The notes: generated by a model from the sequence alone, not told the origin. DNA of 63,395 nucleotides, filler included, from Octopus bimaculoides (GCF_001194135.2; 7 parts of 7 records of this genome joined end to end with filler, not necessarily neighbours in it); one strand, 5' to 3'; shown: positions 7,012-55,080, numbered from the whole stretch's first letter. A program made the numbers and translations.

Positions 7012-8789
7012 NNNNNNNNNNNNNNNNNNNNNNNNNNNNNNNNNNNNNNNNNNNNNNNNNNNNNNNNNNNNNNNNNNNNNNNNNNNNNNNNNNNNNNNNN
7101 NNNNNNNNNNNNNNNNNNNNNNNNNNNNNNNNNNNNNNNNNNNNNNNNNNNNNNNNNNNNNNNNNNNNNNNNNNNNNNNNNNNNNNNNNNNNNNNNNNNN
7201 NNNNNNNNNNNNNNNNNNNNNNNNNNNNNNNNNNNNNNNNNNNNNNNNNNNNNNNNNNNNNNNNNNNNNNNNNNNNNNNNNNNNNNNNNNNNATATATAT
7301 ATATATATATATATATATGAGCACCCCGAGGTGCAGGAGAACGAAGAGAGAGAAAAAAAATATAGTCATACTTCGCGTCTGCAAATAAAAAATTATATCA
7401 CAAAACAGAAATGTAACTGTGTATACGTGTATGTATGAATGTGTTTGTCTCCGTCATTGATAATAAACATACATCTGTCTGTGACTATATGAAAGTGTGT
7501 TCTGAAAGACAATTATTTAACATATTGCGACAAATAGATAAGTAAACGGAGAGAAATGCTTTAGCTGATTCAGGGGGAATTTGTAATGAAAACACACACC
7601 ACACATACACACACAGAGTTAACTGTCATCAACTAGAACCCTTATTACACAACAATATAATCTCAAAGAGGGCTCTGCTACCATAAATCTACGAGCTTTT
7701 ACTGATTCACGAATGAGTTTTATTAATCAGTTAGTATGACTTTTAGAAAGACGCTTTGTCAGATATTTGAGATAATCTTTCTATACTGACGATTCTACAA
7801 CCCAGTACCTTTCAGAAATCGTTATTCCTATACGTTAAGACAAGATAGATCGTTAAGTACAAAACTCATGACAGGTTTCATGTTGAAGTTATTTTGCAGA
7901 GGGCAGAACATAAGGAGTGTTATTGCTTTGATATTGAGAAATATTTGAATTTTACATGTCTTAATTGTGTCATAGTTGGAAATCGTGAAACAGAACTTAT
8001 AAAAAGAAAAAAAGAAAGATGGAAAATTATACAGAAAAAAACTGAAAGACATATTGGAAGGAAGACATTCCTGTACTGAGGCAGAGCAGCACGGCACAGC
8101 ATTTATGAGGCTGTTGCCACATTGGCAATGAAAGCATGAGGATAACTAATTAACTGCAATGTCTCGAGGTGACCAGAATACGATACGAGAGGTTTATATA
8201 ATGACTGGGCTCTCCTTATATCATTAAGGGCCGCGACTAGTCCGCTAGTCAGTCAGTTATAAGAAGTAACTGAGGCTGATTAAGTATTTGAGGCAAAGGT
8301 CCGTGCATCCTAATATATTAATAAAAAAATAGTACTTTTTGTAGAATTTTTATTGTGTTTTCTGGTGTCTGCCGCCAAATCAACATACTTTTACCATATG
8401 AATTTTGTGTTGAGGTGATAATGAATCTTTTTAAGAGTGCAAAGCTTTGCAAATGATCCTGTAGAACATCTGTTAAGAATTGATAAAAATAAAAGCAATT
8501 CCAGCAAGACAGATTGAAAATAAGAAAAACACTATATAATGCTGTCTTTTTGAAGAAACTCTAAAAGACATTTTGGTAAAGTTGTGAAAGCCTAACATAA
8601 AATTATAAATCTGAAATTCAATGTTTTATTATAAACTGCCTTTTCAGTCAAATCATTGAATATTTAAACAGTGACACATTCCTCAATAAGGATAAAGCAC
8701 ATCATTTCTCAATTCAGTTTTGTTTGTGGGGAATAACTCGGCAAAAATGGCTTGTCAAAAAACAAAACAAAAAAAGAAAAGAAAAGAGA

Positions 8790-9564: not shown

Positions 9565-12500
9565 ATATGATACGATATAACCTTGCTTATATTTATATAT
9601 AAAGCGCTCTTTCTCATACGCACACATACATACACATACACACACACATATATATATATACATACATATGCGCATACACACACACACAACAAACACCGAG
9701 AAAGAGATGGAGGGAAGCTGGTAATAAAAGACATGCTCCATAGAATAGCTAAGTGAATGAATGTTGTCCTATGTAAATGTCATTTGCCATGTCTCTAGCT
9801 GTCCGTCATCTCGTGGTAACGCAAACTGTTTTTATTGCCACTTACATCGAACCACTACCACATATGACATTCAGGAAGATGGCGGAATTGTTCCAATATC
9901 GATTACTATTGATTGCTTATGGAGAAAAAAGCTATGATGATTTACAACTAACTGGTCGATATCAGAGCTGGGATTTGTAAAAAAAAGAGAGGAAGAAAAA
10001 TTGTAAACAAAATGATAATCTCTCTCTACCTCTATATATATTGATATCTATCTATCTATCTATCTATCTATCTAAGTAAAATTAAATATGTTTGAACATA
10101 GGAAGTTATACAGCGTGTGTGTGCGTGCATATCTATATGCAGGCACGCATAGATACATGTAACACACACAAATATGTGTGTGCTTGTTCACGCGCGTGTA
10201 TGCATATGTCAGCGTGTGTGCGCGTGCGCCAAATAAGCCTATATGATGATATGCAAGATTATCGTAATTATTGCAGATAGAAGCAACCGACAATTTTGTG
10301 AAGGTTTCTTAGTTAGTAATTGCATCGATTCTTAGTGATTCCATTCGTAAGTCTTGACACCATTGTCTTCAATTAACAGCAAGAACTGATAAGTCCACAG
10401 CAATTAAGCTGTGGTAGGAGTGGAAAATTAACAAGTGGGTTCAAATTCTACCCGTATCTAAAACAACATTATTTATTTCCTGTGTTTTTTCCACCGTTTT
10501 ATGCCACTTTTGGTTAACACCTTCTTCCTGGTATACATGGCTGAGTATTTGAGTATCCTGCAGTCACGTATGCCCTTTGAGATAATTTCTACAAATAATG
10601 TGATGCTATTTGTGATGAGACTGACCCTATTAGATTCAATCAGTCTGAAAGGGTTCCTCTGTTTCTCTCTTACTAATTTCTTTCACATATTATGGATGGT
10701 CAAGAGATTGTTGTAGAAGACATCTCCTGAACGCGCCTTGCATTGAGATTAAAACTGTACCCTTGTGATTGCGAGGCGAATTCCGTAAGGTTTCTCCGCA
10801 GTAGTTGGTTCAAGGTGCTAGAAATAGTAGCCAAATATCTCTGAAACCACACCCTACTGTTTTATAAAATGAAAGGAATATATGAAAAATAGCAAGACAC
10901 TGTCGGTTGGAAGTATTTTTGACCATAGGTTTGCAAGACCTAGCTTCAGCTAATCTACAATAGCTTTTTTTCCAGAATTCTTATTCTTGGGACAATATAT
11001 TTGTGTTACAATACAAGTTTGCGTACAAATTATCAAATGTTTAGAAAACAGAAATCTTTATCAGTCAGTCAGTTGCGGTCGACCTAGCGAACTGGTGCTG
11101 TAGTAGTTCATACTTATTCACCACTCATTAATCAATCTCAGTATCCATGGTTAAAAAAAATCGAAACAACTTCATGAACATTATCATGCAACTCTGATTG
11201 CTTTAAAAATTCCAACTAATTATGAAGTCGATCATCGCAACTCAGCAACGTTTCCCCAATATGTGCGTGAGAGCAATTAAGAATTGCATTCATGTCCATA
11301 ATACTAACCGTACCATTCAGCATCGTCGTTACGTTAATGTTTTCTATCAGCACAAATTTACTCCCCGAATCTGGCAGGTATTGTGTTCACTCCACTTAGT
11401 CTCTTCCAATTCACTCGTCTTTCATTCTTTTATGACCCATCTTGTGTGCAGCCTACTCATTAAGTACTCACCACCACACCCAGTTTTACGTCCCCAGATA
11501 TTTGGCTCTCTGAAATTCTTTCCTTGCACATATATTTCATTCAATAGTCGACTCGTAACAGCTTAAAAGCATTAATGGTTTCAATGTCACCGGCCTCAGA
11601 AAACCTGTGACAGCATGGGTGTTGTCCCGTCTTCCAGACCTAATAAACAGAATCAAGATCATTTCCGATTGCCTCATGCTTTCCATGACTATCATCCAAC
11701 TTACGTTTACCACAGTAATAGCCTTCTTTCAAAATATTTGTCTTTGAAAACATTTATCCTTTGTTCTATCGTTCATCATTAATTTCATTCATTCAGCCTT
11801 TATTGTTTTCTTTCTTTTATTTAGAAGTTTATCCTTTCTTTCATCTATTTTCCTTCAATCATTCACACATCGTATTTTGTTATCATTCATCGCACACTTT
11901 CCCTCTACTAAATCCATTCATAGATCCCAATATAAACTTATATTTTATTTTACTTTTCGCTTCTTAGCTTATCTCGTCTTGTCTATCAGTCCATTGCCTT
12001 CGAAGTCTGCGGATTGGCGAAGCTGTATTTACTTAGGTCCCTTCCATTCATAGTTGAAGTCCCGTTGAAGTAGACTTTATCGTTCATGGATGTTCGATAT
12101 CAGTCTAATCGATAAAATTGGACGTTACCTTCTGCCAAAATCACTGGTATTATACCTATGATATAAATTATTTTTCTCCAGTGTCGGTAGAAATGACAGA
12201 ATGATTTCTTATTTGCTTTTTATTCTTTAATTCCGCTGCTCCAGAATAATAGGTTGTGCACTTATGACTTTCATAGCTCAGTCAAGACCAATGATATCTT
12301 CACCGTTAATACCTCACATTATATATCACAATTTATATTCATAACATCTCGTGCTGTATCTTATGGGTTTTTCAATTAGAGTTGAAATCACGAGAAGGTC
12401 GATTACTGGGGTCAATATGACCGGATACAACCAAACCAAAAATTATATGTAGTCTTCTACTTATGTTAGAATTCATTATGCTTCCATTCTTTTGGTTCAT

Positions 12501-12647: not shown

Positions 12648-13238
12648 ATTGCTGTTATTTTTTTTTGCTTCATCTACCAACCGCCCTTTCTTTTTATTAT
12701 TATTCCGTACGTTATTTCATGATCTATCATTGATTAATTCTTTGTCTTTTTTATGCGTCCGCTCTTTCTTGCATGGTCGTCTGCTTGACGAAAAAGAGAG
12801 ACAGAGAGAGAGAGAAAGAAAGTGGGGGAGAGAGAAAATGAGAAAAAGAACTAAAAACTCAAAGAAGCAGACGATCACACCTGCCAGATGATTATGGCGG
12901 AAAAGACGAAAGTAAAACTCATGAAATTTTTACTGATTAACAACAGTTCCGTTTTTAGGAAAATTATCTTCAGCACCAGTAATGATTAGATTAGACTAAC
13001 CTTCTTGTGAAAATGAATAGATTTTTCTAATTTGGATCTAATGGACTAACGGCGCTGCTAACGTAGGTTTTCTTTCCAAGCTATTAATCTAATGAATTTA
13101 TATTTTATTTTTCTATCACTATCTGACGACATTTTTTTTCTACATGTACATGCTCTTTTTATTTTATATTCTTCCTTTCACATATTTATAAGTGGCAGTC
13201 TGATGCCATTGATCTAGTCCGAGTAGAGCAAGACACAA

Positions 13239-13275
<37 letters not shown>

Positions 13276-13690
13276 NNNNNNNNNNNNNNNNNNNNNNNNN
13301 NNNNNNNNNNNNNNNNNNNNNNNNNNNNNNNNNNNNNNNNNNNNNNNNNNNNNNNNNNNNNNNNNNNNNNNNNNNNNNNNNNNNNNNNNNNNNNNNNNNN
13401 NNNNNNNNNNNNNNNNNNNNNNNNNNNNNNNNNNNNNNNNNNNNNNNNNNNNNNNNNNNNNNNNNNNNNNNNNNNNNNNNNNNNNNNNNNNNNNNNNNNN
13501 NNNNNNNNNNNNNNNNNNNNNNNNNNNNNNNNNNNNNNNNNNNNNNNNNNNNNNNNNNNNNNNNNNNNNNNNNNNNNNNNNNNNNNNNNNNNNNNNNNNN
13601 NNNNNNNNNNNNNNNNNNNNNNNNNNNNNNNNNNNNNNNNNNNNNNNNNNNNNNNNNNNNNNNNNNNNNNNNNNNNNNNNNNNNNNNNNN

Positions 13691-36701: not shown

Positions 36702-37047
36702 TGAGGAAACAAACGAACCAAAAAATTATCGCCCCATAACCTGCNNNNNNNNNNNNNNNNNNNNNNNNNNNNNNNNNNNNNNNNNNNNTTAATTAATTAA
36801 NNNNNNNNNNNNNNNNNNNNNNNNNNNNNNNNNNNNNNNNNNNNGAATTTATTTACAGACAACATAATAATTGTTACCGATCCCCACCCCCATCCAGGAG
36901 TGCAAACTAACACCCCGCCTCCTCTATCGATTGCCCACCACTTCTGTCTTCCACCTTGCAAATTCTCTTCCTACCCGTCCACTTACTACAGCTTCCAATA
37001 GCACAATCACATCTGTCCATGCCCTCACCCAAACACCCACAATACAT

Positions 37048-37092
<45 letters not shown>

Positions 37093-37158
37093 TATATACA
37101 TATCATCATCTGTGTCTCTGTGTGTATATATGTGTGTCTCTCTCTGTGTATATATATA

Positions 37159-37234
<76 letters not shown>

Positions 37235-37311
37235 TATGCACCTATATATACAGGTAGATGCAGGTATGCACATACTTGTACGTATAAATGCATATACTCA
37301 TTTATTATTTG

Positions 37312-37352
<41 letters not shown>

Positions 37353-37884
37353 CACATACACACATCCATATATACACACAGATACATGCCTCTCTCTCTC
37401 TCTCTTTATATATATTATCATACATATATGTGTGTCTCTCTGTGTACGTATGTATGTATATATATATAAATATATATATACACACACACACACATCCATA
37501 TATATATACACACATATATGTGTGTATATATTGATCTCTATTCATGTTCTAAGAAACAAATGAAGACCCACCACCACCACCACCATATTCCAAAGGACAT
37601 ATTCTTCCTGTTAGATTAGGAAGTGCAACACCAGCTGCACACAGCTGTGTCATGGCAATGGTGGTGGTGTTGGGGTGGCGAGACTACACGTGTATATATA
37701 TATGTGTTTGTGAGTTTAAGAATTAAAGTGCCAGAATGTACACCCCCACACACACAAGCACGCAGGCAAATGTATTTTAAAAACAACTATGTTTGATTTA
37801 TTAAGGATTTTCCCACAATTCCCTGTTTACCTGTTCAGGTTTTGTTAATCCATTAGGCTGACAACACTTTCAGATTTCTCCAGT

Positions 37885-38296
37885 TTAACCCTTTAAGCAT
37901 TCAGATTAATCTGTCAAACTTAATCCTTATTTATTCACATTGTTTTGAATTAATCCTGCATTATCTCACAACCCAGAGATTTCAACGATGCGACTTTACT
38001 TTCTCAAAATGACATTGTAAGGTTTGTGTGAGAGGCCAGATCTAGCCAGTTTGAACATGAAACAAGTAGAACATGGCTGGTTTAATCCTTTAGCATTTGG
38101 ATTATTTTATCAAATCTAATGCTTATTTATTCACATTGTTTTGACTTAATTTTGTCTCATCTTGTAGCTTCAAGATTCCTATGATGTGATTGCTTATTTT
38201 AAGAATGACATTGTAGGGTAAGCATGAGAGACCAGATCCAGCCAGTTTGAACAGAAAACAAGTAGAACATGGCTGGTTTAATCCTTTAGCATAGAA
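37885..38296. repeat. Head-to-tail tandem of a piggyBac-like MITE (about 197-bp period, 2 units plus start of a third)
   Basis: ttaa-(c/t)cctttagcat starts at 37885, 38082 and 38278, with homologous unit interiors (ttattcacattgttttga...gacattgta...gccagtttgaaca...agtagaacatggctggt). Confidence 0.85.
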
Positions 38297-38490
38297 CCCA
38301 AAGCTACGTGATTCGGAGGTGCAAACTTCCTTACCTACACAACCAGCTGTGGTGCCTTTTTACTTTCCCCCCGTGACAGTAAAATGCAATTGGCAAAAAC
38401 TCTTGGCTGCTATTTCTCGCACCAGGTGGAGCACCAACAAAGAGGTCCTCGTTAACGACACGACATGTTCGTTAGAGTTCATCCACTTAC

Positions 38491-38609
38491 CTTATCAATT
38501 AAGGCTCTCAGTATGTTGTTAATGCATTCGTCAACCGTTGTCTCCCCTGCTTTCAAGACCACGTCGGGATTTTCGGGGGGTTCGTACACAGAGTCGACAC
38601 CAGTGAAAG
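38491..38609 (-). CDS. PAPSS: Internal exon of PAPS synthase, end of APS-kinase domain (equivalent to vertebrate exon 5)
   Basis: 119-nt exon (ttacag acceptor, gtaag donor) in phase with the previous exon (T+CT=Ser). It translates (S)FTGVDSVYEPPENPDVVLKAGETTVDECINNILRALIDK, the FTG(I/V)DSxYExP motif. The 139/119 sizes match those I recall for vertebrate PAPSS1. Confidence 0.93.
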
Positions 38610-38639
38610 CTGTAACGATAAACAAACAGAAGGATTGTC

Positions 38640-39017
38640 GCTGTCAGAGGAGGTGGTCATGGGAATGGTGATAGTGTTGATGGTGGTGGTGGTGATGGAG
38701 ATGGTTGTGGCATTGGTGGAGACGGTTGTGGTGGTGGCTGTAGTGGTAGTGGTGGAGAGGGTTGTGGTGGTGTTAGTGCTAATGGTTGTTATGGTGAATG
38801 TGATGGTTGTAGTGGTAGTGGTGGTGTTGGTAGTGGCAGTGGTGGTTGTAGAGGTGGTGTTAGTGCTAATGGTTGTCAAGGTGATTGTGATAGTTGTGGT
38901 GGTGGTGGTTGTAGTGGTGTTGATAGTAGTGATGGGGTGGTGGTGGTGGTGGTGGTATTTGCGGTCACAGAGATGATGATTATGTGCTTAATGTTTATGC
39001 CGATGGTGGTGGCTGTG

Positions 39018-39056
<39 letters not shown>

Positions 39057-39531
39057 TCATGCAATGTTTAGGCAATATTAGGAGTAAAAGGCCAATTTCC
39101 TGTCCAATATAAAAGACAGTTGACTTTATTTTGGTAAATATTGACATAGTGGTGATGGTGGTGGTGGTGGAGGCAGTTCTAATAATGAAAGTGGTGGTGT
39201 AGGTGGTGTGGATGGCGCCAGTGAAGAGAAAAGTGATGGTGATGGTGGTGGTGGAGGCAGTTCTAGCGGTGTAGGAGTTGCATTGGTGATGAGAATGATG
39301 ATGGTGGTGGTGGTAAGAAAGTCGTGTGTGACACATAAAAATGTGGTGGTGGAGTTAGTGAAGATAATTATGGTGGCGTTGGAGACGACGACAATGGTGG
39401 TGGTGGTGGTGGTGGTGATGACGATGATGATGATGATGGTGATGACAACAGAGGTGTTCAAACAACTGACGTTGATGGTGAGTGGATTTGGTAGACGGAA
39501 ACTGAAAAGAAGCCCGTCGTATATATGTACG

Positions 39532-39580
<49 letters not shown>

Positions 39581-39840
39581 ATGTATGATTGCGATGGTGA
39601 TGATGATGGTGGCAGTGATGATTAATTAGGGCAATGGTCGTGATCGTTATGAACATTATTGTGTCAGTGATGACGATGATGGTGATGGTGGTGGTGGTGG
39701 TGGTGACAATGGTGATGACAAAGTCAGTGGTGATCCAACGATGATGATGATTAGGATGACGGTTGTGATTGTGATGAAGATTACCTGCGGCAGTGATGAC
39801 AAAATCAACAACGATGACGAAGGTGACGACGACGACGAAG
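38640..39840. repeat. Degenerate (GGT/GAT/GTA)n low-complexity tract inside the PAPSS intron
   Basis: Trinucleotide-like low complexity that generates spurious poly-V/T/M ORFs. Confidence 0.9.
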
Positions 39841-39991
39841 GTATTGCTGATTAAATGCGAGATTACACAGGAGGGGGAAAAAAAATTAAAGAAGTAAAAG
39901 ACAAAAGAAAAAAAAACCAAACCAAATTTCCTCAAAATCTTTCGCAAATATCTTTACTTAAAAACTTTCTTATATCATGGCTGCAGATTCT

Positions 39992-40005
39992 GTTGCTATG
40001 GCAAC
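39992..40005. promoter_or_regulatory. RFX X-box-like palindrome
   Basis: GTTGCTATGGCAAC, one mismatch from the canonical palindrome GTTGCCATGGCAAC. Confidence 0.35.
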
Positions 40006-40140
40006 ACATACCACCCACTTCCCCCCCATCCCCGAAGCTAAGATGAACTGGATTCAACCAGATTCAACTAGTTTCAACCAATAACCTGTGTATACCACGT
40101 CATTGGTGTACATATATATGTGTATATATGTCTGTGTATG

Positions 40141-40171
<31 letters not shown>

Positions 40172-40207
40172 GTGTGTGTGGATGTATGTATATAGGAGTG
40201 TGTGTAT

Positions 40208-40440
40208 GTGGGCGTGGCTGTGTGGTAAGAAGCTTGCTTCCCAACCACATAGTTCCAGGTTCAGTCCCACTGCGTGGCACCTTGGGCAGGTGTCTTCTAC
40301 TATAACATTAGGCTGGCCAAAGCCTTGTGAATGGATTTGGTAGACGGAAACTGAAAGAAGCCAGTCGTATAGATGTATATATTTATGCGTGTGTGTGTGT
40401 GTGTCTGTGCTTGTTCCCCAACATCGCTTGACAACCAATG
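40208..40440 (+). mobile_element. SINE family A copy ending next to the PAPSS exon donor
   Basis: Head gtgggcgtggctgtgtggtaagaagc... continues through ...cttgacaaccaatg and stops about 5 nt from the cttac donor at 40445-40449. Confidence 0.85.
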
Positions 40441-40449
40441 TATACTTAC

Positions 40450-40588
40450 ATTTAATAAGTCCAGCCCTAGCTTTCTTGTAAAGACCCTTGATGTCTCGAT
40501 TTTCACAAATCTCCAGCGATGTGTTCACGTAACATTCGATAAATGGTAACTTGTCGTCGTTATGCAGCTGGCGTGCATTATTCCGATC
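40450..40588 (-). CDS. PAPSS: Internal exon of PAPS synthase, APS-kinase domain (equivalent to vertebrate exon 4)
   Basis: 139-nt exon with cag acceptor after a pyrimidine tract and gtaag donor. It translates [46 protein letters not shown], matching the PAPSS/CysC motif DRxxARxxH...C-E[14 protein letters not shown]. Confidence 0.95.
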
Positions 40589-40914
40589 CTGCAAACAAGA
40601 AAACCAAGCACAATCAGTTAGAATCAAAATTAATTAATTAATTAGATAATGAAATCTTATACGTTTTATCTTTTACTTGTTTCAGTCATTCGATAGCAGC
40701 CATACTAAAGCACTGCCTTGAACAAATTTATTTCAATCAAACAAATTGTCCCTGGAAATTTGAAATTTTCTTTTGTAAAGCCTGGTACTTATTTTATTAG
40801 TGTTCTTTTGCTGAACTGTTAAGTTATGTAAACACACCTACACCAGTTATTGAGCGATGGTGGGGGAACAAACCCAGACACAAACACACATACAGATATT
40901 TCGCAGACTACAGG

Positions 40915-41105
40915 CGATTTTTTTCCCCTCTTTCTTCCTTTTCCTTTAGACTTTCCTGTATTTCCTGTTTCCGAAGAAGAGCTGTGCTCGAAATGTAAAA
41001 CAACTACTCCTTTCCTTCTTCGAGCCTCTCATTAATACTTTGCATGTGCTACGTCCTCACATTGTCAACTTATTTTCTTGTCTTTTTCTCTGGTCTTTAT
41101 TCTGT
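40915..41105 (+). mobile_element. Penelope-like pseudo-LTR remnant with a minimal hammerhead-like motif
   Basis: tgttt-CCGAAGA-a-gagc-tgt-gctc-GAAA-tgt-a-aaaca at 40966-41002 within a pyrimidine-rich segment. Confidence 0.5.
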
Positions 41106-41116
41106 CTTTTGAATTA

Positions 41117-41160
<44 letters not shown>

Positions 41161-41164
41161 TAAA

Positions 41165-41375
41165 TGCGCCCTTTTAAAGCCTAGCCAGGCTCATGGGCCC
41201 AGTTTCCCGGTTTCTATGGCGTATGCGTTCCCCAGCTGGATGGGACGCCAGTCCATCGCAGCGTTACTCATTTTTGCCAGCTGAGTGGACTGGAGCAACG
41301 TGAAATGAAGTGTTTTGCTCAAGAACACAACGCGTCGCCCGGTCCAGGAATCGAAACCACAATCTTACGATCATG
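41165..41375 (-). mobile_element. tRNA-derived SINE with a conserved central domain (gttcttgagcaaaacactt)
   Basis: Minus strand has a B-box-like ggtttcgattcc followed by gcgttgtgttcttgagcaaaacacttcatttcacgttgctccagtccactcagctgg. A related copy lies at about 47160-47425. Confidence 0.7.
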
Positions 41376-43546
41376 CGTAAATATATATATACAAACACCC
41401 ACACAAACACACATAGATGTATATACACATACTAACACACAATGGACAACTTGAAGTTACTGTCTGCCAAATCAACTCATTAACGAGAGCGGGGAAACAA
41501 GACCGAGGGGATGGTCCAGGCTGGAATGTCTTCGATCATACGACAACATTTCAATGTAGGCGTTGTGTCATTACCAGTTCGTTAACCCACTCCCGACTGC
41601 ATATCCTGTCGGCTGCACAGCACTGCATCACCCCATCAGTCGCTCCCAGAACGGTGGTGGCGGCAGTGTGTGTGTGGGGGGGGAGGCGGTATTAGGGGGG
41701 GGGAGTACGGGATGAGGTAGNNNNNNNNNNNNNNNNNNNNNNNNNNNNNNNNNNNNNNNNNNNNNNNNNNNNNNNNNNNNNNNNNNNNNNNNNNNNNNNN
41801 NNNNNNNNNNNNNNNNNNNNNNNNNNNNNNNNNNNNNNNNNNNNNNNNNNNNNNNNNNNNNNNNNNNNNNNNNNNNNNNNNNNNNNNNNNNNNNNNNNNN
41901 NNNNNNNNNNNNNNNNNNNNNNNNNNNNNNNNNNNNNNNNNNNNNNNNNNNNNNNNNNNNNNNNNNNNNNNNNNNNNNNNNNNNNNNNNNNNNNNNNNNN
42001 NNNNNNNNNNNNNNNNNNNNNNNNNNNNNNNNNNNNNNNNNNNNNNNNNNNNNNNNNNNNNNNNNNNNNNNNNNNNNNGCCATCACTACGCGCACGCCTG
42101 TTGCTCCACATTATTTCTGCACAGACTTAAACACTAATTCCGCCTCCCCTCTCCCCAACCACCACCACCACTGCCCTACATACAAACCCCCCCAAGCACC
42201 TAGCCCCACCCCAGCCTCACCCACCCTTAGTGGTGAGAGCCAAGGGAAGGGAGGGGGCTGTGTATGAGAGGCAAGGGTGTGTTATGTGCCTGGCCTAGTT
42301 TTATTTCAGTGGAGGGGGCCTTTCATCTCTCCTCTCCCCCCTCTCTCTCTATCACCCCATATTGCTTAAGGTCTGTGTACTTATACCCTACATTTCATGA
42401 CATGTGTCACCCAGCATCTGACTGTGTCTGTCTGCCTGCTTGCCTGTCTGTCCAAGAAGGGGGGCAGTCTACATTTATACATACATGCTGGTACATGTGT
42501 ATATATAAATGTGTGTGTGTGTGTGTACATATATATGTAGGGATGTATGTGTGTATGTGCATACATATATTTTTATAAATGTATAAGTTTATCCAGAGGT
42601 CATAATACAAATAAAGACAATTAGGCTTGACATATATAAAAACATACACCTCTCTCTCTCTCNNNNNNNNNNNNNNNNNNNNNNNNNNNNNNNNNNNNNN
42701 NNNNNNNNNNNNNNNNNNNNNNNNNNNNNNNNNNNNNNNNNNNNNNNNNNNNNNNNNNNNNNAAAACATAAAATGGTTATAAGGGTCCACCTGAGTAAAA
42801 TAGGAATCAAAAACAGTCCTTAGATGGAAAATGGTTGAGAACCATTGTGTTAGAGGGCAGCACTGGGCAGATATGGTGTTTTAGAAGTTAAAAAAACCAC
42901 AAACGTATTTCAACTAATTCTCTTGCATTTGCTGGTTTTTAATAAATGGTTTTTCCCAGGGATGCCATTTGCTTGAAGTTCACCACAAAATCATGTCTGA
43001 GCTTCTTGATGTGTTACACAATCTCAGTAAACAAAAGGCTAATTTGTATGGTGTCGTTTGTTCCTATTCAGGCTGTTTGTTATTCTATAGGCTGTTTGGA
43101 AACAAGTTTGTGAGGTTTGTGACAGGAAGAGCATCCTACTGTTGGAAATGAAAAACTCTGATCCATTCAAGCATGATGGTCTCTTGCTTGTTTCAGTCAT
43201 TAGACTGTGGCCATGCTGGGGTACTGCCTTGAAGAATTTTTAGTCGAATGAATTGACCCCAGCAGTTATTATAAGCCTGGTACTTATTCTATTGGTCTCC
43301 TTTGCTGAACTGCTTTGCTGAAACACACACACAGCCACATACATACCCAGACACACTCACATACATGCAGACACATGCATATATACGACGGGCTTCTTTC
43401 AGTTTCCATCTGCCAAATCTACTCACAAGGCTTTGGTTGTCCCAAGGCTATAGTGGAACGCACTTACCCAAGGTGCCGCTCAGTGAGACTGAACCTGGAA
43501 CCATGTGACTAGGAAGTAAACATCTCATTTGATTTCTTTATTTCAG

Positions 43547-43795
43547 AAAATGTTGTAATTGGAGGAAGTGCAACCCTCTCAATTCGCATTCCAAATATAA
43601 AGAGACCGGCTGTGTGGGTGTGTGGAACTAAAAAATATGAATGCGATAGAACATGCGTTAATGGTTCTGAATTTCAAGTGAGGCAGTGGGGCAACATGTC
43701 TTCTCTTTGGATCAGAAGAGTCATGAACAAATGTTTGACTTGGAAATTCTATGATGACAACTTCAACATGGCGAGAATTCGTTTGAAAATAAATG
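43547..43795 (+). CDS. Exon encoding an atypical Ig-like beta-sandwich domain (nested antisense gene)
   Basis: tttgatttctttatttcag acceptor, G|gtaag donor, 249 nt, phase 1-1, fully open: (E)NVVIGGSATLSIRIPNIKRPAVWVCGTKKYECDRTCVNGSEFQVRQWGNMSSLWIRRVMNKCLTWKFYDDNFNMARIRLKIN(G). It has Ig-like V-x-x-G-x-S-A-T-L, C-strand W and S-S-L-x-I-x-x-V patterns, and two N-glycosylation sequons (NGS, NMS). Confidence 0.75.
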
Positions 43796-44172
43796 GTAAG
43801 AAAATTACTTATTATAATCCTTTCTACTATAGGCACAGAGCATGAAATTTGTGGGGAAGGGTTGATTACATCGGTCCCAGTACATGACTGGTACACAATT
43901 TATCATGGACGGATAGGTGTTCTCATCTTGTTTGATGTCATCAGGTGTCCTGGTGGAATTTCAAACCCAACACTTTATTTGACTATTGGAGTACACTGTT
44001 TTCATTCCGAAGGTATGTTGCTGGTGTTATTTTCCAGTTAATATTATTTTTCAAGTCCCTGCCTGGAACTTAGAGTCCCAGGGCCAGCTTAAATGCTAAA
44101 TGGTTGTTAATGTTTGAGAACCACATGTTCAATGCCTTCTCTCAAACTGTCAATGTATATAATGTTTAATTC

Positions 44173-44404
44173 TATCAGGTTGTCCGGAAAGTTCATGCCG
44201 GTTTTTAAAGGGAAGAAAAAGGTCAATGAATACTTGCCATTACATTTTTAATCAACCAAATATGAACCATTTTGTTGCACAATGCGTCTCCATCTTTCCT
44301 TTAACTTGAAAATACCCTCTTCCCAGAATTGAGGTGGTTTCATGGCAAATAAGTCGAAAGGTAAGCTACTATAAATCGGCACAAACTTTCCGGACAACCC
44401 AATA
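44173..44404 (-). mobile_element. Mariner internal-deletion MITE
   Basis: TA-flanked ~30-bp TIRs (tcaggttgtccggaaagttcatgccggttt / aaatcggcacaaactttccggacaacccaa). The interior encodes the mariner C-terminus FDLFAMKPPQFWEEGIFKLKERWRRIVQQNGSYLVD*. Confidence 0.92.
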
Positions 44405-44515
44405 TATGCAAGACTTCATTATCATTATTTAATTATTGTAACATATAGAGTAATCAATCCTGTTGATTGAATATAAAATCTGAAACTCAAACATTTTTGT
44501 TTTCGTCTTTTACAG

Positions 44516-44554
44516 ATTCGACAAGAATAGAAATTTATAAAATAACCCAAAATG
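44516..44554 (+). CDS. Small phase 1-1 exon, probably following the Ig-like exon
   Basis: Long pyrimidine tract (ttttgttttcgtcttttacag), 39 nt open (D)STRIEIYKITQN(G), G|gtaaat donor. Phase is compatible with 43547-43795. Confidence 0.5.
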
Positions 44555-44659
44555 GTAAATGGATTTACAAACTCCTTTTAAGTTAAACACTGTTTTTTCA
44601 ATTCTGTCTTCTATTTCTTTACTTAACTCTTAGTTCTTAGCCACTTTCTTTTGACTTTT

Positions 44660-44865
44660 TCCAATCGGCTCAATTTTCTTCTTTTGCCTAACGTTTCTCT
44701 TGATACCTTAACACTTTGTTTCGTATGTACACTGACATTGCACATCCAAAAGAACCTACTAACTTTATTCCTCTCTACTCTTTGTATGTCCTCTGCATTT
44801 AGGGTCCATGTCTCACTATTATGTAGCAGTGCTCTTCATATACAAGCATCATACAATGTGCCTTT
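44660..44865 (-). mobile_element. RTE LINE fragment
   Basis: Homologous to 51270-51420 (actgacattgcacatcca...). It ends at a gap. Confidence 0.75.
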
Positions 44866-54939: not shown

Positions 54940-55080
54940 CAGTCTTATCTTTCCTGTGCTTCTGCTTTGGTTTTCGTCCAGTTGTGACCTCTTTCTATCT
55001 GGATTTTTTTCAAAGAATAACTGGGCCAACATCATACACTTTCTCTGGTATCTTGGAAGCTCTAATTTACTGCATTGCAT
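54940..55080 (-). CDS. Candidate first coding exon of PAPSS
   Basis: ATG-initiated 47-codon frame MQCSKLELPRYQRKCMMLAQLFFEKNPDRKRSQLDENQSRSTGKIRL ending at CTG|gtgag (phase 0). The basic RKRxxL patch resembles PAPSS N-termini, and a CACGTG E-box lies about 30 nt upstream. No strong homology, so assignment to PAPSS is inference. Confidence 0.35.

What the first reader, a model, noticed from the sequence alone, without database searches (positions are those of the whole stretch)
43547..44554. Nested antisense gene with an atypical Ig-like domain inside the PAPSS locus
Seen: two clean phase 1-1 exons on the plus strand, upstream of the minus-strand PAPSS exon at 40588 and below the candidate first exon at 54940. 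The 83-codon domain has Ig-like strand patterns but lacks the canonical B-strand Cys (ATLSI) and the DxGxYxC motif. It instead carries four Cys (WVC, ECDRTC, KCLTW) and two sequons. Knowledge: phase 1-1 single-domain exons are typical of IgSF genes. Inference: a lineage-specific secreted or surface Ig-like protein with a rewired disulfide pattern, nested in a housekeeping gene. I cannot assign it to a named family.
Basis: partly seen in the sequence, partly recalled or inferred. Interest (0 to 1): 0.72.

Follow-up and report, generated by a model that had tools for sequence, protein, structure and literature searches.

The report
Octopus-specific Ig-like surface protein exons
These are two real coding exons of an undescribed, octopus-only family of cell-surface proteins built from immunoglobulin-like domains with an unusual cysteine pattern; they lie on the strand opposite a PAPS synthase gene, but whether they sit inside that gene cannot be checked in this piece.

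Summary
Exon 43547-43795 (249 nt) and mini-exon 44516-44554 (39 nt) are open, phase 1-1 and have canonical splice sites. Those sites match, in position and nearly in sequence, the annotated exons of Octopus bimaculoides LOC106867739.

The 82-residue domain has no Pfam hit. It matches 29 cluster representatives (21 at E<=1e-10). Every named relative is an 'uncharacterized protein' of Octopus sinensis, O. vulgaris, O. bimaculoides or Argonauta hians. The full-length relatives have a signal peptide, 1-4 tandem copies of this domain joined by 13-residue 'YKITQ' linkers, a transmembrane helix and a short tail.

AlphaFold2 models the window domain at pLDDT 96. All top Foldseek hits are Ig domains (titin/obscurin I-set, VL). 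The linker mini-exon supplies strand A of the next domain.

The canonical B-F cysteines are absent. Cys25 and Cys62 appear or disappear together across paralogues, and Cys32/Cys36 are near-invariant.

The window copy looks intact: dN/dS is 0.32-0.38 and its profile score is mid-range.

Nesting in PAPSS is plausible but untestable, because only two 3'-ward APS-kinase exons are in the piece. No signal-peptide or transmembrane exon is present. The function is unknown and is inferred to be surface recognition.

The parts
43547..43795 (+). Domain exon: 249 nt, phase 1-1. It encodes strands A'-G of one Ig-like domain (82 full codons plus split codons).
   Evidence: Open frame and splice sites. Homology to 29 octopod family representatives. 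Splice positions identical to the annotated exons of LOC106867739. AF2 pLDDT 96.2 with seven strands. Ig-domain Foldseek hits. dN/dS 0.32-0.38 against paralogous exons. Leave-one-out profile score ranks 14th of 34.
43796..44515 (+). Intron of 720 nt, running from gtaaga to ttttacag. It carries a 228-nt TIR element at 44175-44402.
   Evidence: Canonical GT..AG boundaries. With the insert removed, the sequence is colinear with paralogous introns in L001 and L002.
44516..44554 (+). Mini-exon: 39 nt, phase 1-1. It encodes the inter-domain linker and strand A of the following domain, (D)STRIEIYKITQN.
   Evidence: 11 of 14 residues are identical to the P0007 linker NSTRIEIYKMTQNA, and it matches P0017 at E 1.2e-5. 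It is homologous to the three annotated 39-nt exons of L002. In the AF2 model of a linker+domain unit, the linker forms strand A.
44405..44515 (+). Conserved intronic flank upstream of the mini-exon. It continues at 44122-44174 on the other side of the TIR insert.
   Evidence: 74-79% identical to five paralogous copies, against 60-67% for the domain exons.
44555..44650 (+). Conserved, pyrimidine-rich intronic flank downstream of the mini-exon.
   Evidence: Alignment with five paralogous copies. Indels break any reading frame, so it is non-coding. RefSeq model P0017 wrongly reads into the homologous intron.

Best explanation
The two exons are consecutive coding exons of one member of an undescribed, octopod-restricted gene family. 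The family encodes type I membrane glycoproteins. Their ectodomain is a string of 1-4 divergent Ig-like (I-set/V-like) domains.

Each domain is split between a 39-nt mini-exon (linker plus strand A, consensus xSxAxxYKITQx) and a ~249-nt exon (strands A'-G). Both exon types are phase 1-1, so units can be duplicated, skipped or swapped without breaking the frame.

The window holds the body of one domain and the linker/strand A of the next. The signal-peptide exon, the first mini-exon, the next domain exon and the transmembrane exon lie outside the piece or in its assembly gaps.

The domain lacks the canonical B-F disulfide. It is inferred to be stabilised instead by Cys25 (end of strand C) paired with Cys62 (E-F turn), and by a local Cys32-Cys36 bridge at the C' end.

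Shown here: the exons, the homology, the exon architecture, the predicted fold, the signature of purifying selection, and transcription and splicing of another family member.

Inferred: the disulfide pairing, expression of this particular copy, and function. I take the function to be extracellular recognition or adhesion at the cell surface, with domain number and identity varied by cassette splicing.
For: Homology:
- 29 representatives, 21 at E<=1e-10. All the named ones are octopod 'uncharacterized proteins'.
- The full-length relatives show a signal peptide, tandem domains, a TM helix and a short tail.

Gene structure:
- LOC106867739 (locus L002) is SP exon + [39-nt exon + ~250-nt exon] x3 + TM exon. 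Its acceptor and donor sequences are almost identical to the window's.

Integrity of the window copy:
- All near-invariant residues are kept: W23, E31, C32, C36, V44, W65, D69, L79.
- Its leave-one-out HMM score is 122.8 bits, rank 14 of 34.
- dN/dS is 0.32-0.38 with dS about 1, the same as among annotated paralogues (0.26-0.39).

Fold:
- AF2 gives pLDDT 96.2 and pTM 0.85 with seven strands.
- All top-50 PDB Foldseek hits are Ig domains, with TM up to 0.73.
- With the linker included, 120 hits reach E<=1e-3; the 50 listed are all Ig domains (VL, titin, obscurin, sDscam Ig1, one nanobody), and the linker forms strand A.
- Viral-library hits are also Ig-like proteins.
- Pfam I-set sits just under threshold for multi-domain relatives: P0001 scores 23.6 bits against a 23.7 cut-off.

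Cysteines:
- C25 and C62 are both present in 20 sequences, one alone in 4, and both absent in 14.
- C32 and C36 are both present in 37 of 38.

Expression of the family:
- A 1,067-nt Logan contig (run SRR3401912) carries an intron-less SP-linker-domain-TM ORF.
- RefSeq isoforms of LOC115225115 differ by whole mini-exon and domain units.
Against: - No signal-peptide, first-linker or TM exon was found in the 6.7 kb upstream or the 311 nt downstream. The piece contains 458 nt of N gaps at 41721-42078 and 42663-42762.
- No annotated protein identical to this exon was recovered. The word index also missed the known family members whose own domain segments made up the query, so this absence is weak evidence.
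- A 228-nt TIR element interrupts the conserved flank about 110 nt upstream of the mini-exon acceptor. It could impair splicing.
- No expression data exist for this locus.
- The fold and the disulfides are predictions. Foldseek E-values for the bare domain are modest (about 1e-3).
- The window domain itself has no Pfam Ig hit.
Confidence: 0.78

Rival explanations
1. It is a relic fragment. On this reading the exon pair was copied by segmental duplication of a family gene into the PAPSS region. It is not part of a complete, expressed gene, and is still intact only because it is young or by luck.
For: - No 5' (SP/linker) or 3' exons are detectable in the piece.
- Family members are scattered over several chromosomes and small contigs.
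- A TIR element is inserted in the conserved mini-exon flank.
- No identical annotated protein was found.
Against: - The frame is open.
- All near-invariant residues and both pairs of splice sites are preserved.
- The profile score is mid-range for the family.
- dN/dS of 0.32-0.38 equals that of annotated paralogues, while dS is about 1. The copy has therefore been under constraint for most of a long divergence.
- The piece ends 311 nt after the mini-exon, whereas in L002 the next domain exon lies 545-1440 nt downstream. Absence of the 3' exons is therefore expected.
Confidence: 0.17
2. It is a chance open frame, or antisense non-coding sequence within the PAPSS locus, with no protein-coding meaning.
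For: A 110-codon open frame (43513-43845) is not extraordinary in 8 kb of 40% GC DNA. Pfam finds nothing.
Against: Homology down to E=7e-100 with annotated octopod proteins, conserved exon boundaries, dN/dS well below 1 and a confident fold prediction.
Confidence: 0.01
3. The domain is cargo of a mobile element. On this reading the SINE-like sequence that abuts the acceptor, and the dispersed distribution of copies, reflect transduction or retrocopying rather than a cellular gene family.
For: - A SINE-like element (43180-43525) ends about 20 nt before the acceptor.
- The same junction is seen upstream of domain exons in L001 and L002.
- Copies lie on several chromosomes.
Against: - The SINE-like sequence is intronic. 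It stops before the polypyrimidine tract and is not translated.
- Annotated members are ordinary multi-exon genes with SP and TM exons, lying in tandem clusters.
- No transposase or reverse-transcriptase ORF is associated with the unit.
- The shared junction is more simply explained by a SINE insertion that predates the exon and gene duplications.
Confidence: 0.02

Closest known systems
Unnamed octopod family of 'uncharacterized proteins' (e.g. O. sinensis LOC115225115 / XP_036369928.1, LOC115229017; O. bimaculoides LOC106867739, LOC106878976; O. vulgaris CAI9744053.1; Argonauta hians GAB1602944.1)
   Same: - The same ~82-residue domain, at 28-68% identity.
- The same near-invariant W, E-C-x3-C, V, W, D and L residues.
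- The same 13-residue YKITQ linker.
- The same 249-nt and 39-nt phase 1-1 exons with near-identical splice-site sequences.
   Different: - No relative above 68% identity was recovered, so this copy appears to be a distinct paralogue, or an orthologue that was not retrieved.
- It has Ile where many RefSeq models start at an internal Met (MKRP).
- It lacks the common NVT sequon at position 57.
- It is the only copy seen here next to PAPSS.
I-set immunoglobulin domains (Pfam PF07679; titin, obscurin, twitchin)
   Same: - The predicted beta-sandwich has A, A', B, C, C', D, E, F and G strands.
- TM-score is 0.66-0.71 and rmsd 2.5-3.4 A to titin I27, obscurin and twitchin Ig26.
- The strand-C Trp is conserved.
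- Pfam I-set is the best sub-threshold match for relatives.
   Different: - There is no significant sequence match for the window domain.
- The canonical B and F positions are Ile12 and Tyr68, not Cys.
- The four Cys sit at other positions (C25, C32, C36, C62).
- The family is extracellular and glycosylated, with a TM anchor, whereas those I-set examples are intracellular muscle proteins.
Shortened Dscam (sDscam) / Dscam Ig1 and other diversified invertebrate IgSF receptors (mollusc FREPs; the FREP comparison is from memory)
   Same: - Cell-surface proteins with Ig-like domains encoded by tandemly duplicated, frame-symmetric exons.
- sDscam Ig1 structures (7y5j, 7y95) are among the Foldseek hits for the linker+domain unit.
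- Predicted isoforms differ by whole domain units.
   Different: - No sequence homology and no canonical Ig cysteines.
- No fibrinogen domain (as in FREPs) and no FnIII domain or long cytoplasmic tail (as in Dscam).
- No evidence here of mutually exclusive splicing or of any immune or neuronal role.
Ig V-type domains that lack the B-F disulfide, such as CD2 domain 1 (established knowledge)
   Same: A surface adhesion protein whose Ig-like domain folds without the canonical disulfide. CD2 (1hnf) appears as a weak profile hit (E 0.94).
   Different: The similarity is not significant, and CD2 d1 has no replacement 4-Cys pattern.

Membership tests
Octopod 4-Cys Ig-like tandem-domain membrane protein family (unnamed) | Significant full-length sequence similarity of the domain to family members | tested here: met
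   phmmer against 1.84 billion representatives: 21 hits at E<=1e-10, covering query residues 1-82. Leave-one-out profile score 122.8 bits, rank 14 of 34.
Octopod 4-Cys Ig-like tandem-domain membrane protein family (unnamed) | Near-invariant residues W23, E31, C32, C36, V44, W65, D69, L79 | tested here: met
   All are present in the window sequence (alignment A1).
Octopod 4-Cys Ig-like tandem-domain membrane protein family (unnamed) | Exon architecture: ~249-nt phase 1-1 domain exon alternating with a 39-nt phase 1-1 YKITQ mini-exon | tested here: met
   Window exons are 249 nt and 39 nt. Their boundaries are positionally identical to the annotated LOC106867739 exons.
Octopod 4-Cys Ig-like tandem-domain membrane protein family (unnamed) | Signal peptide and transmembrane segment in the same gene | tested here: inconclusive
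   tblastn with 50+ family proteins found no SP or TM exon in 36845-44865. The piece has 458 nt of gaps and ends 311 nt after the mini-exon.
Octopod 4-Cys Ig-like tandem-domain membrane protein family (unnamed) | Transcribed and spliced | not testable with these tools
   There is no RNA data for this locus. Another member is seen as a spliced transcript contig (L003).
Immunoglobulin superfamily (Ig-like fold, I-set/V-like) | Two-sheet Greek-key beta-sandwich of 7-9 strands | tested here: met
   This is a prediction only. AF2 gives pLDDT 96.2 and 93.8. All top Foldseek PDB hits are Ig domains: TM up to 0.73, and 120 hits at E<=1e-3 for the linker+domain unit.
Immunoglobulin superfamily (Ig-like fold, I-set/V-like) | Canonical intersheet disulfide (Cys in strand B, Cys in the F-strand YxC motif) | tested here: not met
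   The B position is Ile12 and the F position is Tyr68. No family member has a Cys in strand B.
Immunoglobulin superfamily (Ig-like fold, I-set/V-like) | Conserved Trp in strand C | tested here: met
   W23 is conserved in at least 90% of the sequences and lies in predicted strand 21-25.
Immunoglobulin superfamily (Ig-like fold, I-set/V-like) | Match to a curated Ig profile (Pfam I-set, V-set, Ig_3, ig) above threshold | tested here: not met
   The window domain has 0 families at E<=10. The best relatives fall just below the cut-off: I-set 23.6 bits against 23.7 for P0001 and 21.6 for P0034. Four of 38 single domains give weak I-set hits.
Gene nested in a PAPSS intron | PAPSS exons on the opposite strand on both sides of the plus-strand exons | not testable with these tools
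   Only the exons at lower coordinates are present: 40451-40591 and 38491-38616, which match the APS_kinase profile at positions 87-152. Exons for the first ~136 residues are absent from 40592-44865 and would have to lie beyond the piece.

The most novel reading that the evidence does not exclude
The family is an octopod-specific, clustered and cassette-spliced repertoire of surface Ig-like receptors. On this reading it is used for diversified cell-cell or self/non-self recognition, as a functional analogue of Dscam/sDscam, FREPs or clustered protocadherins. The unusually conserved introns around the 39-nt mini-exons would then act as the splicing-control elements that choose which domain units are included.
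Probability: 0.1. Interest if true: 0.75.

Novelty: new variant of a known kind. Interest (0 to 1): 0.42.

Why it matters
Octopods have no antibody system, and their large nervous systems are thought to rely on lineage-specific expansions of surface recognition molecules, protocadherins being the known example. This finding points to a second family that has not been described. It is a clustered, octopod-only set of Ig-like membrane proteins that no Pfam model detects. Its cysteine framework is non-canonical, and its exon design (a 39-nt exon plus a 249-nt exon, both phase 1-1) makes domain number and identity easy to vary.

If the family is expressed in neurons, suckers or haemocytes, it would be a candidate recognition system. 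It would also add a natural example of an Ig fold stabilised by a C-strand to E-F-turn disulfide.

For this window specifically, the practical result is an annotation: two coding exons of such a gene lie antisense to PAPSS.

Tried and rejected
- **Pfam on the domain.** No hit at E<=10.
- **Word-indexed homologue search.**
  - The 82-aa domain found nothing.
  - The 38-sequence alignment found only 4 proteins and missed the family members whose own domain segments made up the query. This index is unreliable here, so its silence is not evidence that the gene is absent.
  - The third search used the PAPSS exons, to try to reach the annotated PAPSS locus and test nesting. It returned only 61-66% identical fragments from unnamed contigs, so that route failed.
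- **Exact look-ups of P0007, P0002 and P0001.** None is on record, so the loci of the closest relatives could not be inspected.
- **Search for further family exons in the piece.** tblastn with all family proteins at E<=1 found none. A weak minus-strand match at 43099-43176 (E 0.2) was judged to be chance.
- **In-frame similarity just upstream of the acceptor** (FDFFISE against YKIIQSE). Rejected: it is the polypyrimidine tract and the AG read in frame, and annotated paralogues splice at exactly this AG.
- **Read-through of the mini-exon donor**, as in RefSeq model P0017. Rejected: indels among the paralogues destroy the frame.
- **Mariner transposase identity of the 44248-44397 minus-strand ORF.** Pfam does not confirm it. 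The label rests on the TIRs, the TA duplication and my recollection of mariner C-termini.
- **Profile search against PDB sequences.** Only non-significant titin, CD2 and obscurin hits.
- **Literature.** No paper mentions the LOC identifiers, and two keyword searches found nothing on this family.

Full report
**1. The observation**

The piece (36845-44865) is AT-rich, repeat-laden animal DNA with two assembly gaps, at 41721-42078 and 42663-42762.

On the plus strand, 43547-43795 is a 249-nt segment.
- It is preceded by tttctttatttcag and followed by gtaaga.
- Read in phase 1 it gives 82 full codons with no stop: NVVIGGSATLSIRIPNIKRPAVWVCGTKKYECDRTCVNGSEFQVRQWGNMSSLWIRRVMNKCLTWKFYDDNFNMARIRLKIN.

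A second segment, 44516-44554, is 39 nt.
- It is preceded by cgtcttttacag and followed by gtaaat.
- It continues the frame as (D)STRIEIYKITQN and again ends in phase 1.

**2. It is not chance**

Pfam finds nothing, and the word-indexed homologue search found nothing. An exhaustive phmmer scan of 1.84 billion cluster representatives told a different story.
- It found 29 proteins at E<=1e-3, 21 at E<=1e-10 and 7 at E<=1e-30.
- The best was P0001 at E=7e-100, because it contains four copies of the domain.
- Three of the weakest hits (P0024, P0025, P0028) are unrelated proteins from unnamed contigs.
- Every named relative is an 'uncharacterized' or 'hypothetical' protein, apart from one model named zinc finger protein 239-like (P0023). 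They come from Octopus sinensis, O. vulgaris, O. bimaculoides or Argonauta hians.
- Many share one scaffold per species: a 21.3-Mb scaffold in O. sinensis, a 34.6-Mb scaffold in O. vulgaris, and the 12-Mb CM046629.1 in O. bimaculoides. The family is therefore largely a tandem cluster, with some dispersed members.

**3. What the family looks like**

The full-length members have four parts:
- a signal peptide;
- one to four copies of the ~82-residue domain (consensus ..VLG...TL.I.IPNMKRPVVW.C.NYKYECD.TCA.G..YKVTQ.GN.STLWI..VT..CLTW.F.DDN.N.G.I.LKI.);
- 13-residue linkers between the copies (x-S-x-A-x-x-YKITQ-x);
- a transmembrane helix and a short cytoplasmic tail.

The window's mini-exon peptide is such a linker. 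It shares 11 of 14 residues with the O. vulgaris protein P0007 (NSTRIEIYKMTQNA).

**4. Gene structure in an annotated relative**

I fetched the O. bimaculoides locus of LOC106867739 (L002) and mapped its protein onto the DNA.
- The gene is an SP exon, then [39-nt exon + ~250-nt exon] three times, then a TM exon.
- Its acceptors and donors are almost letter-for-letter those of the window. L002 has cctgatttctttatttcag|AAAATGTTGT where the window has catttgatttctttatttcag|AAAATGTTGT. For the mini-exons, L002 has catcttttacag|G...AAAATG|gtaaat where the window has cgtcttttacag|A...AAAATG|gtaaat.

A second O. bimaculoides locus (L001, LOC106878976) shows the same unit. The window's exon boundaries are therefore homologous to annotated ones.

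A 1,067-nt Logan contig from run SRR3401912 carries an uninterrupted SP-linker-domain-TM ORF. It is a spliced mRNA of another family member.

**5. Is the window copy intact?**

- It keeps all eight near-invariant residues.
- In a leave-one-out profile test it scores 122.8 bits, 14th of 34 domains.
- Against the L001 and L002 domain exons its dN/dS is 0.32 and 0.38, with dS about 1. Annotated paralogues among themselves give 0.26-0.39.

This shows long-term purifying selection. It cannot exclude a recent loss of function.

No signal-peptide, first-linker, further-domain or TM exon is detectable in the piece. The piece ends 311 nt after the mini-exon, however, and in L002 the next domain exon lies 545-1440 nt downstream. 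The upstream region also contains 458 nt of gaps.

By analogy with P0007 and P0008, the gene probably continues into a membrane-proximal variant domain and then a TM exon. This is inference.

**6. Fold**

AlphaFold2 was run on the window domain with a 38-sequence family alignment.
- It gives mean pLDDT 96.2 and pTM 0.85.
- The model has strands at residues 8-13, 21-25, 28-32, 42-47, 50-55, 64-68 and 74-78.

Foldseek against the PDB returns only Ig domains in the top 50.
- They include titin M1, I27 and I81, obscurin, twitchin Ig26 and antibody VL.
- TM-scores are 0.55-0.73, the best rmsd is 2.5-2.6 A, and E-values are about 1e-3.
- The viral library gives herpesvirus, adenovirus and poxvirus Ig-like proteins.

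A second model covered a linker+domain unit (P0002 residues 118-213).
- It has pLDDT 93.8.
- The linker residues VY-ITQ form an extra N-terminal strand.
- Foldseek then gives 120 PDB hits at E<=1e-3. The 50 listed are all Ig domains, mostly VL and I-set types and including sDscam Ig1.

Structurally, then, a complete domain is a mini-exon (strand A) plus a domain exon (strands A'-G). The window's mini-exon belongs to the next domain.

At the sequence level, Pfam I-set is the best match but stays below threshold.
- P0001 scores 23.6 bits against the 23.7 cut-off, and P0034 scores 21.6.
- Four of 38 single domains give weak I-set hits.
- A PDB profile search gives only non-significant titin, CD2 and obscurin hits.

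**7. Cysteine framework**

In the 38-domain alignment:
- C32 and C36 are both present in 37 of 38 sequences.
- C25 and C62 occur together in 20, singly in 4, and are both absent in 14.
- An alternative pair, C68/C73 (motif FCDxxFC), occurs only when C25 and C62 are absent. It marks the membrane-proximal variant domains.

In the model, C25 ends strand C and C62 sits in the turn just before strand F. C and F are neighbouring antiparallel strands of the GFC sheet in Ig domains (established knowledge), so a C25-C62 bridge is sterically natural. C32-C36 would close the C' end.

This pairing is inferred, because I could not read the model coordinates. The canonical B and F positions are Ile12 and Tyr68.

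**8. How it most likely works**

The gene encodes a glycosylated type I surface protein. Its ectodomain is a chain of these Ig-like modules. With a short tail that shows no recognisable domain, the most likely role is extracellular binding, that is, recognition or adhesion.

All internal exons are phase 1-1, so units can be duplicated or skipped in frame. RefSeq isoforms X8, X9, X11 and X12 of O. sinensis LOC115225115 differ in two ways:
- by exactly one 13-residue mini-exon unit, with two linkers spliced back to back in X8 and X9;
- in X9 only, by which domain exons are used in the middle of the protein.

Function, ligand and tissue are unknown. These statements are inference from architecture.

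**9. Surroundings and the nesting claim**

On the minus strand, 40451-40591 and 38491-38616 encode APS-kinase profile positions 87-152, equivalent to human PAPSS1 residues ~137-223. This is a PAPS synthase gene running leftward.

Exons for its first ~136 residues are not in 40592-44865. If the gene is intact they lie beyond the piece, and the Ig-like exons would then sit in a PAPSS intron. My attempt to reach the annotated PAPSS locus failed.

**10. Comparison and novelty**

The closest thing is the unnamed octopod family itself. The window meets its sequence, residue and exon-structure criteria.

The family works like, and is predicted to fold like, an I-set/V-like Ig domain. It fails two defining IgSF sequence features: the B-F cysteines and a curated profile match. 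I therefore call it a divergent Ig-like family rather than a standard IgSF member.

I found no paper on it. Ig domains without the canonical disulfide are well known (titin I-set domains, CD2 domain 1), and lineage-specific IgSF expansions are common. The finding is a solid new variant, not a new kind of system.

**11. Verdict**

These are real exons of a real, undescribed octopod Ig-like surface-protein family, and the copy looks intact. Nesting and expression are unverified. Interest is moderate.

Noticed in passing
window 43180-43525 (inverted partial copy at 40228-40402; related pieces at 40669-40808): A SINE-like element ends about 20 nt before the domain-exon acceptor. The same SINE/intron junction (...cttcttacc|tgatttctttatttcag) lies upstream of the domain exons in L001 and in L002 domains 1 and 2. 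The insertion therefore predates the exon and gene duplications and travelled with the duplicating unit.
   Followed up: partly
window 44175-44402: A 228-nt element with ~33-nt terminal inverted repeats (35-nt arms including the flanking TA, 83% complementary), flanked by TA...TA. It is absent from the homologous position in five paralogous introns. It looks like a mariner-type deletion derivative (MITE). Its minus-strand ORF (44248-44397...FWEEGIFKLKERWRRIVQQNGSYLVD) recalls mariner C-termini from memory, but Pfam does not confirm this.
   Followed up: partly
window 44122-44174, 44405-44515 and 44555-44650; L001 ~7960-8280 and 11037-11203; L002 ~10255-10476, 11903-12186, 13146-13368: The introns flanking the 39-nt mini-exon are 73-79% identical among paralogues. 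The domain exons are only 60-67% identical, with synonymous sites near saturation. The flanks are non-coding, since indels break any frame. Possible explanations are splicing-control elements for a very short exon, or gene conversion. This remains unexplained.
   Followed up: partly
window 40451-40591 and 38491-38616, minus strand: Two exons of a PAPS synthase gene (APS_kinase PF01583 positions 87-152). They are 66% and 38% identical to human PAPSS1 residues 137-183 and 182-223.
   Followed up: yes
window 38630-39800 and 37040-37560: A long G/T-rich imperfect (GGT/GTG)n-type array with GC skew up to +0.74, and TA/CA/TC microsatellite blocks. Both generate many spurious long ORFs on both strands inside the PAPSS introns.
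   Followed up: no
window 37893-38284: A tandem duplication of a 196-nt unit, 77% identical (family D9).
   Followed up: no
window 41721-42078 and 42663-42762: Runs of N (358 and 100 nt) inside the piece. These assembly gaps could hide the upstream mini-exon or signal-peptide exon of the plus-strand gene.
   Followed up: no
relatives P0017, P0009, P0023, P0007/8/16/22/35/38-40: Several database models of this family look like annotation artefacts.
- P0017 reads through the mini-exon donor into the intron.
- The C-terminus of P0009 is a frameshifted reading of a domain exon.
- P0023 fuses C2H2 zinc fingers to a domain copy.
- Many models start at the internal Met of MKRP because their 5' exons were missed.
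   Followed up: partly
alignment A1 (family domains); e.g. P0003 residues 219-296, P0007 residues 83-161: A membrane-proximal domain variant lacks C25 and C62. It carries FCDxxFC (C68/C73) instead, with C68 at the canonical F-strand Cys position. The two cysteine patterns are mutually exclusive.
   Followed up: partly
O. sinensis LOC115225115 isoforms (P0001, P0030, P0031, P0032): The predicted isoforms differ by whole 13-residue mini-exon units, and X9 also by which domain exons it uses. In two isoforms, two linkers are spliced back to back. This is cassette usage made possible by the phase 1-1 design.
   Followed up: partly
L003 (Logan contig SRR3401912_19461, 1067 nt): An intron-less SP-linker-domain-TM ORF of 138 aa. 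It is a spliced transcript of a single-domain family member. The species and tissue of the run were not identified.
   Followed up: partly
window 43099-43176, minus strand: A weak similarity (E 0.2) of SCLNGSEFFISNSRMLFLSQTSQTCF to the middle of the family domain. It is probably chance, but could be a decayed inverted fragment.
   Followed up: no
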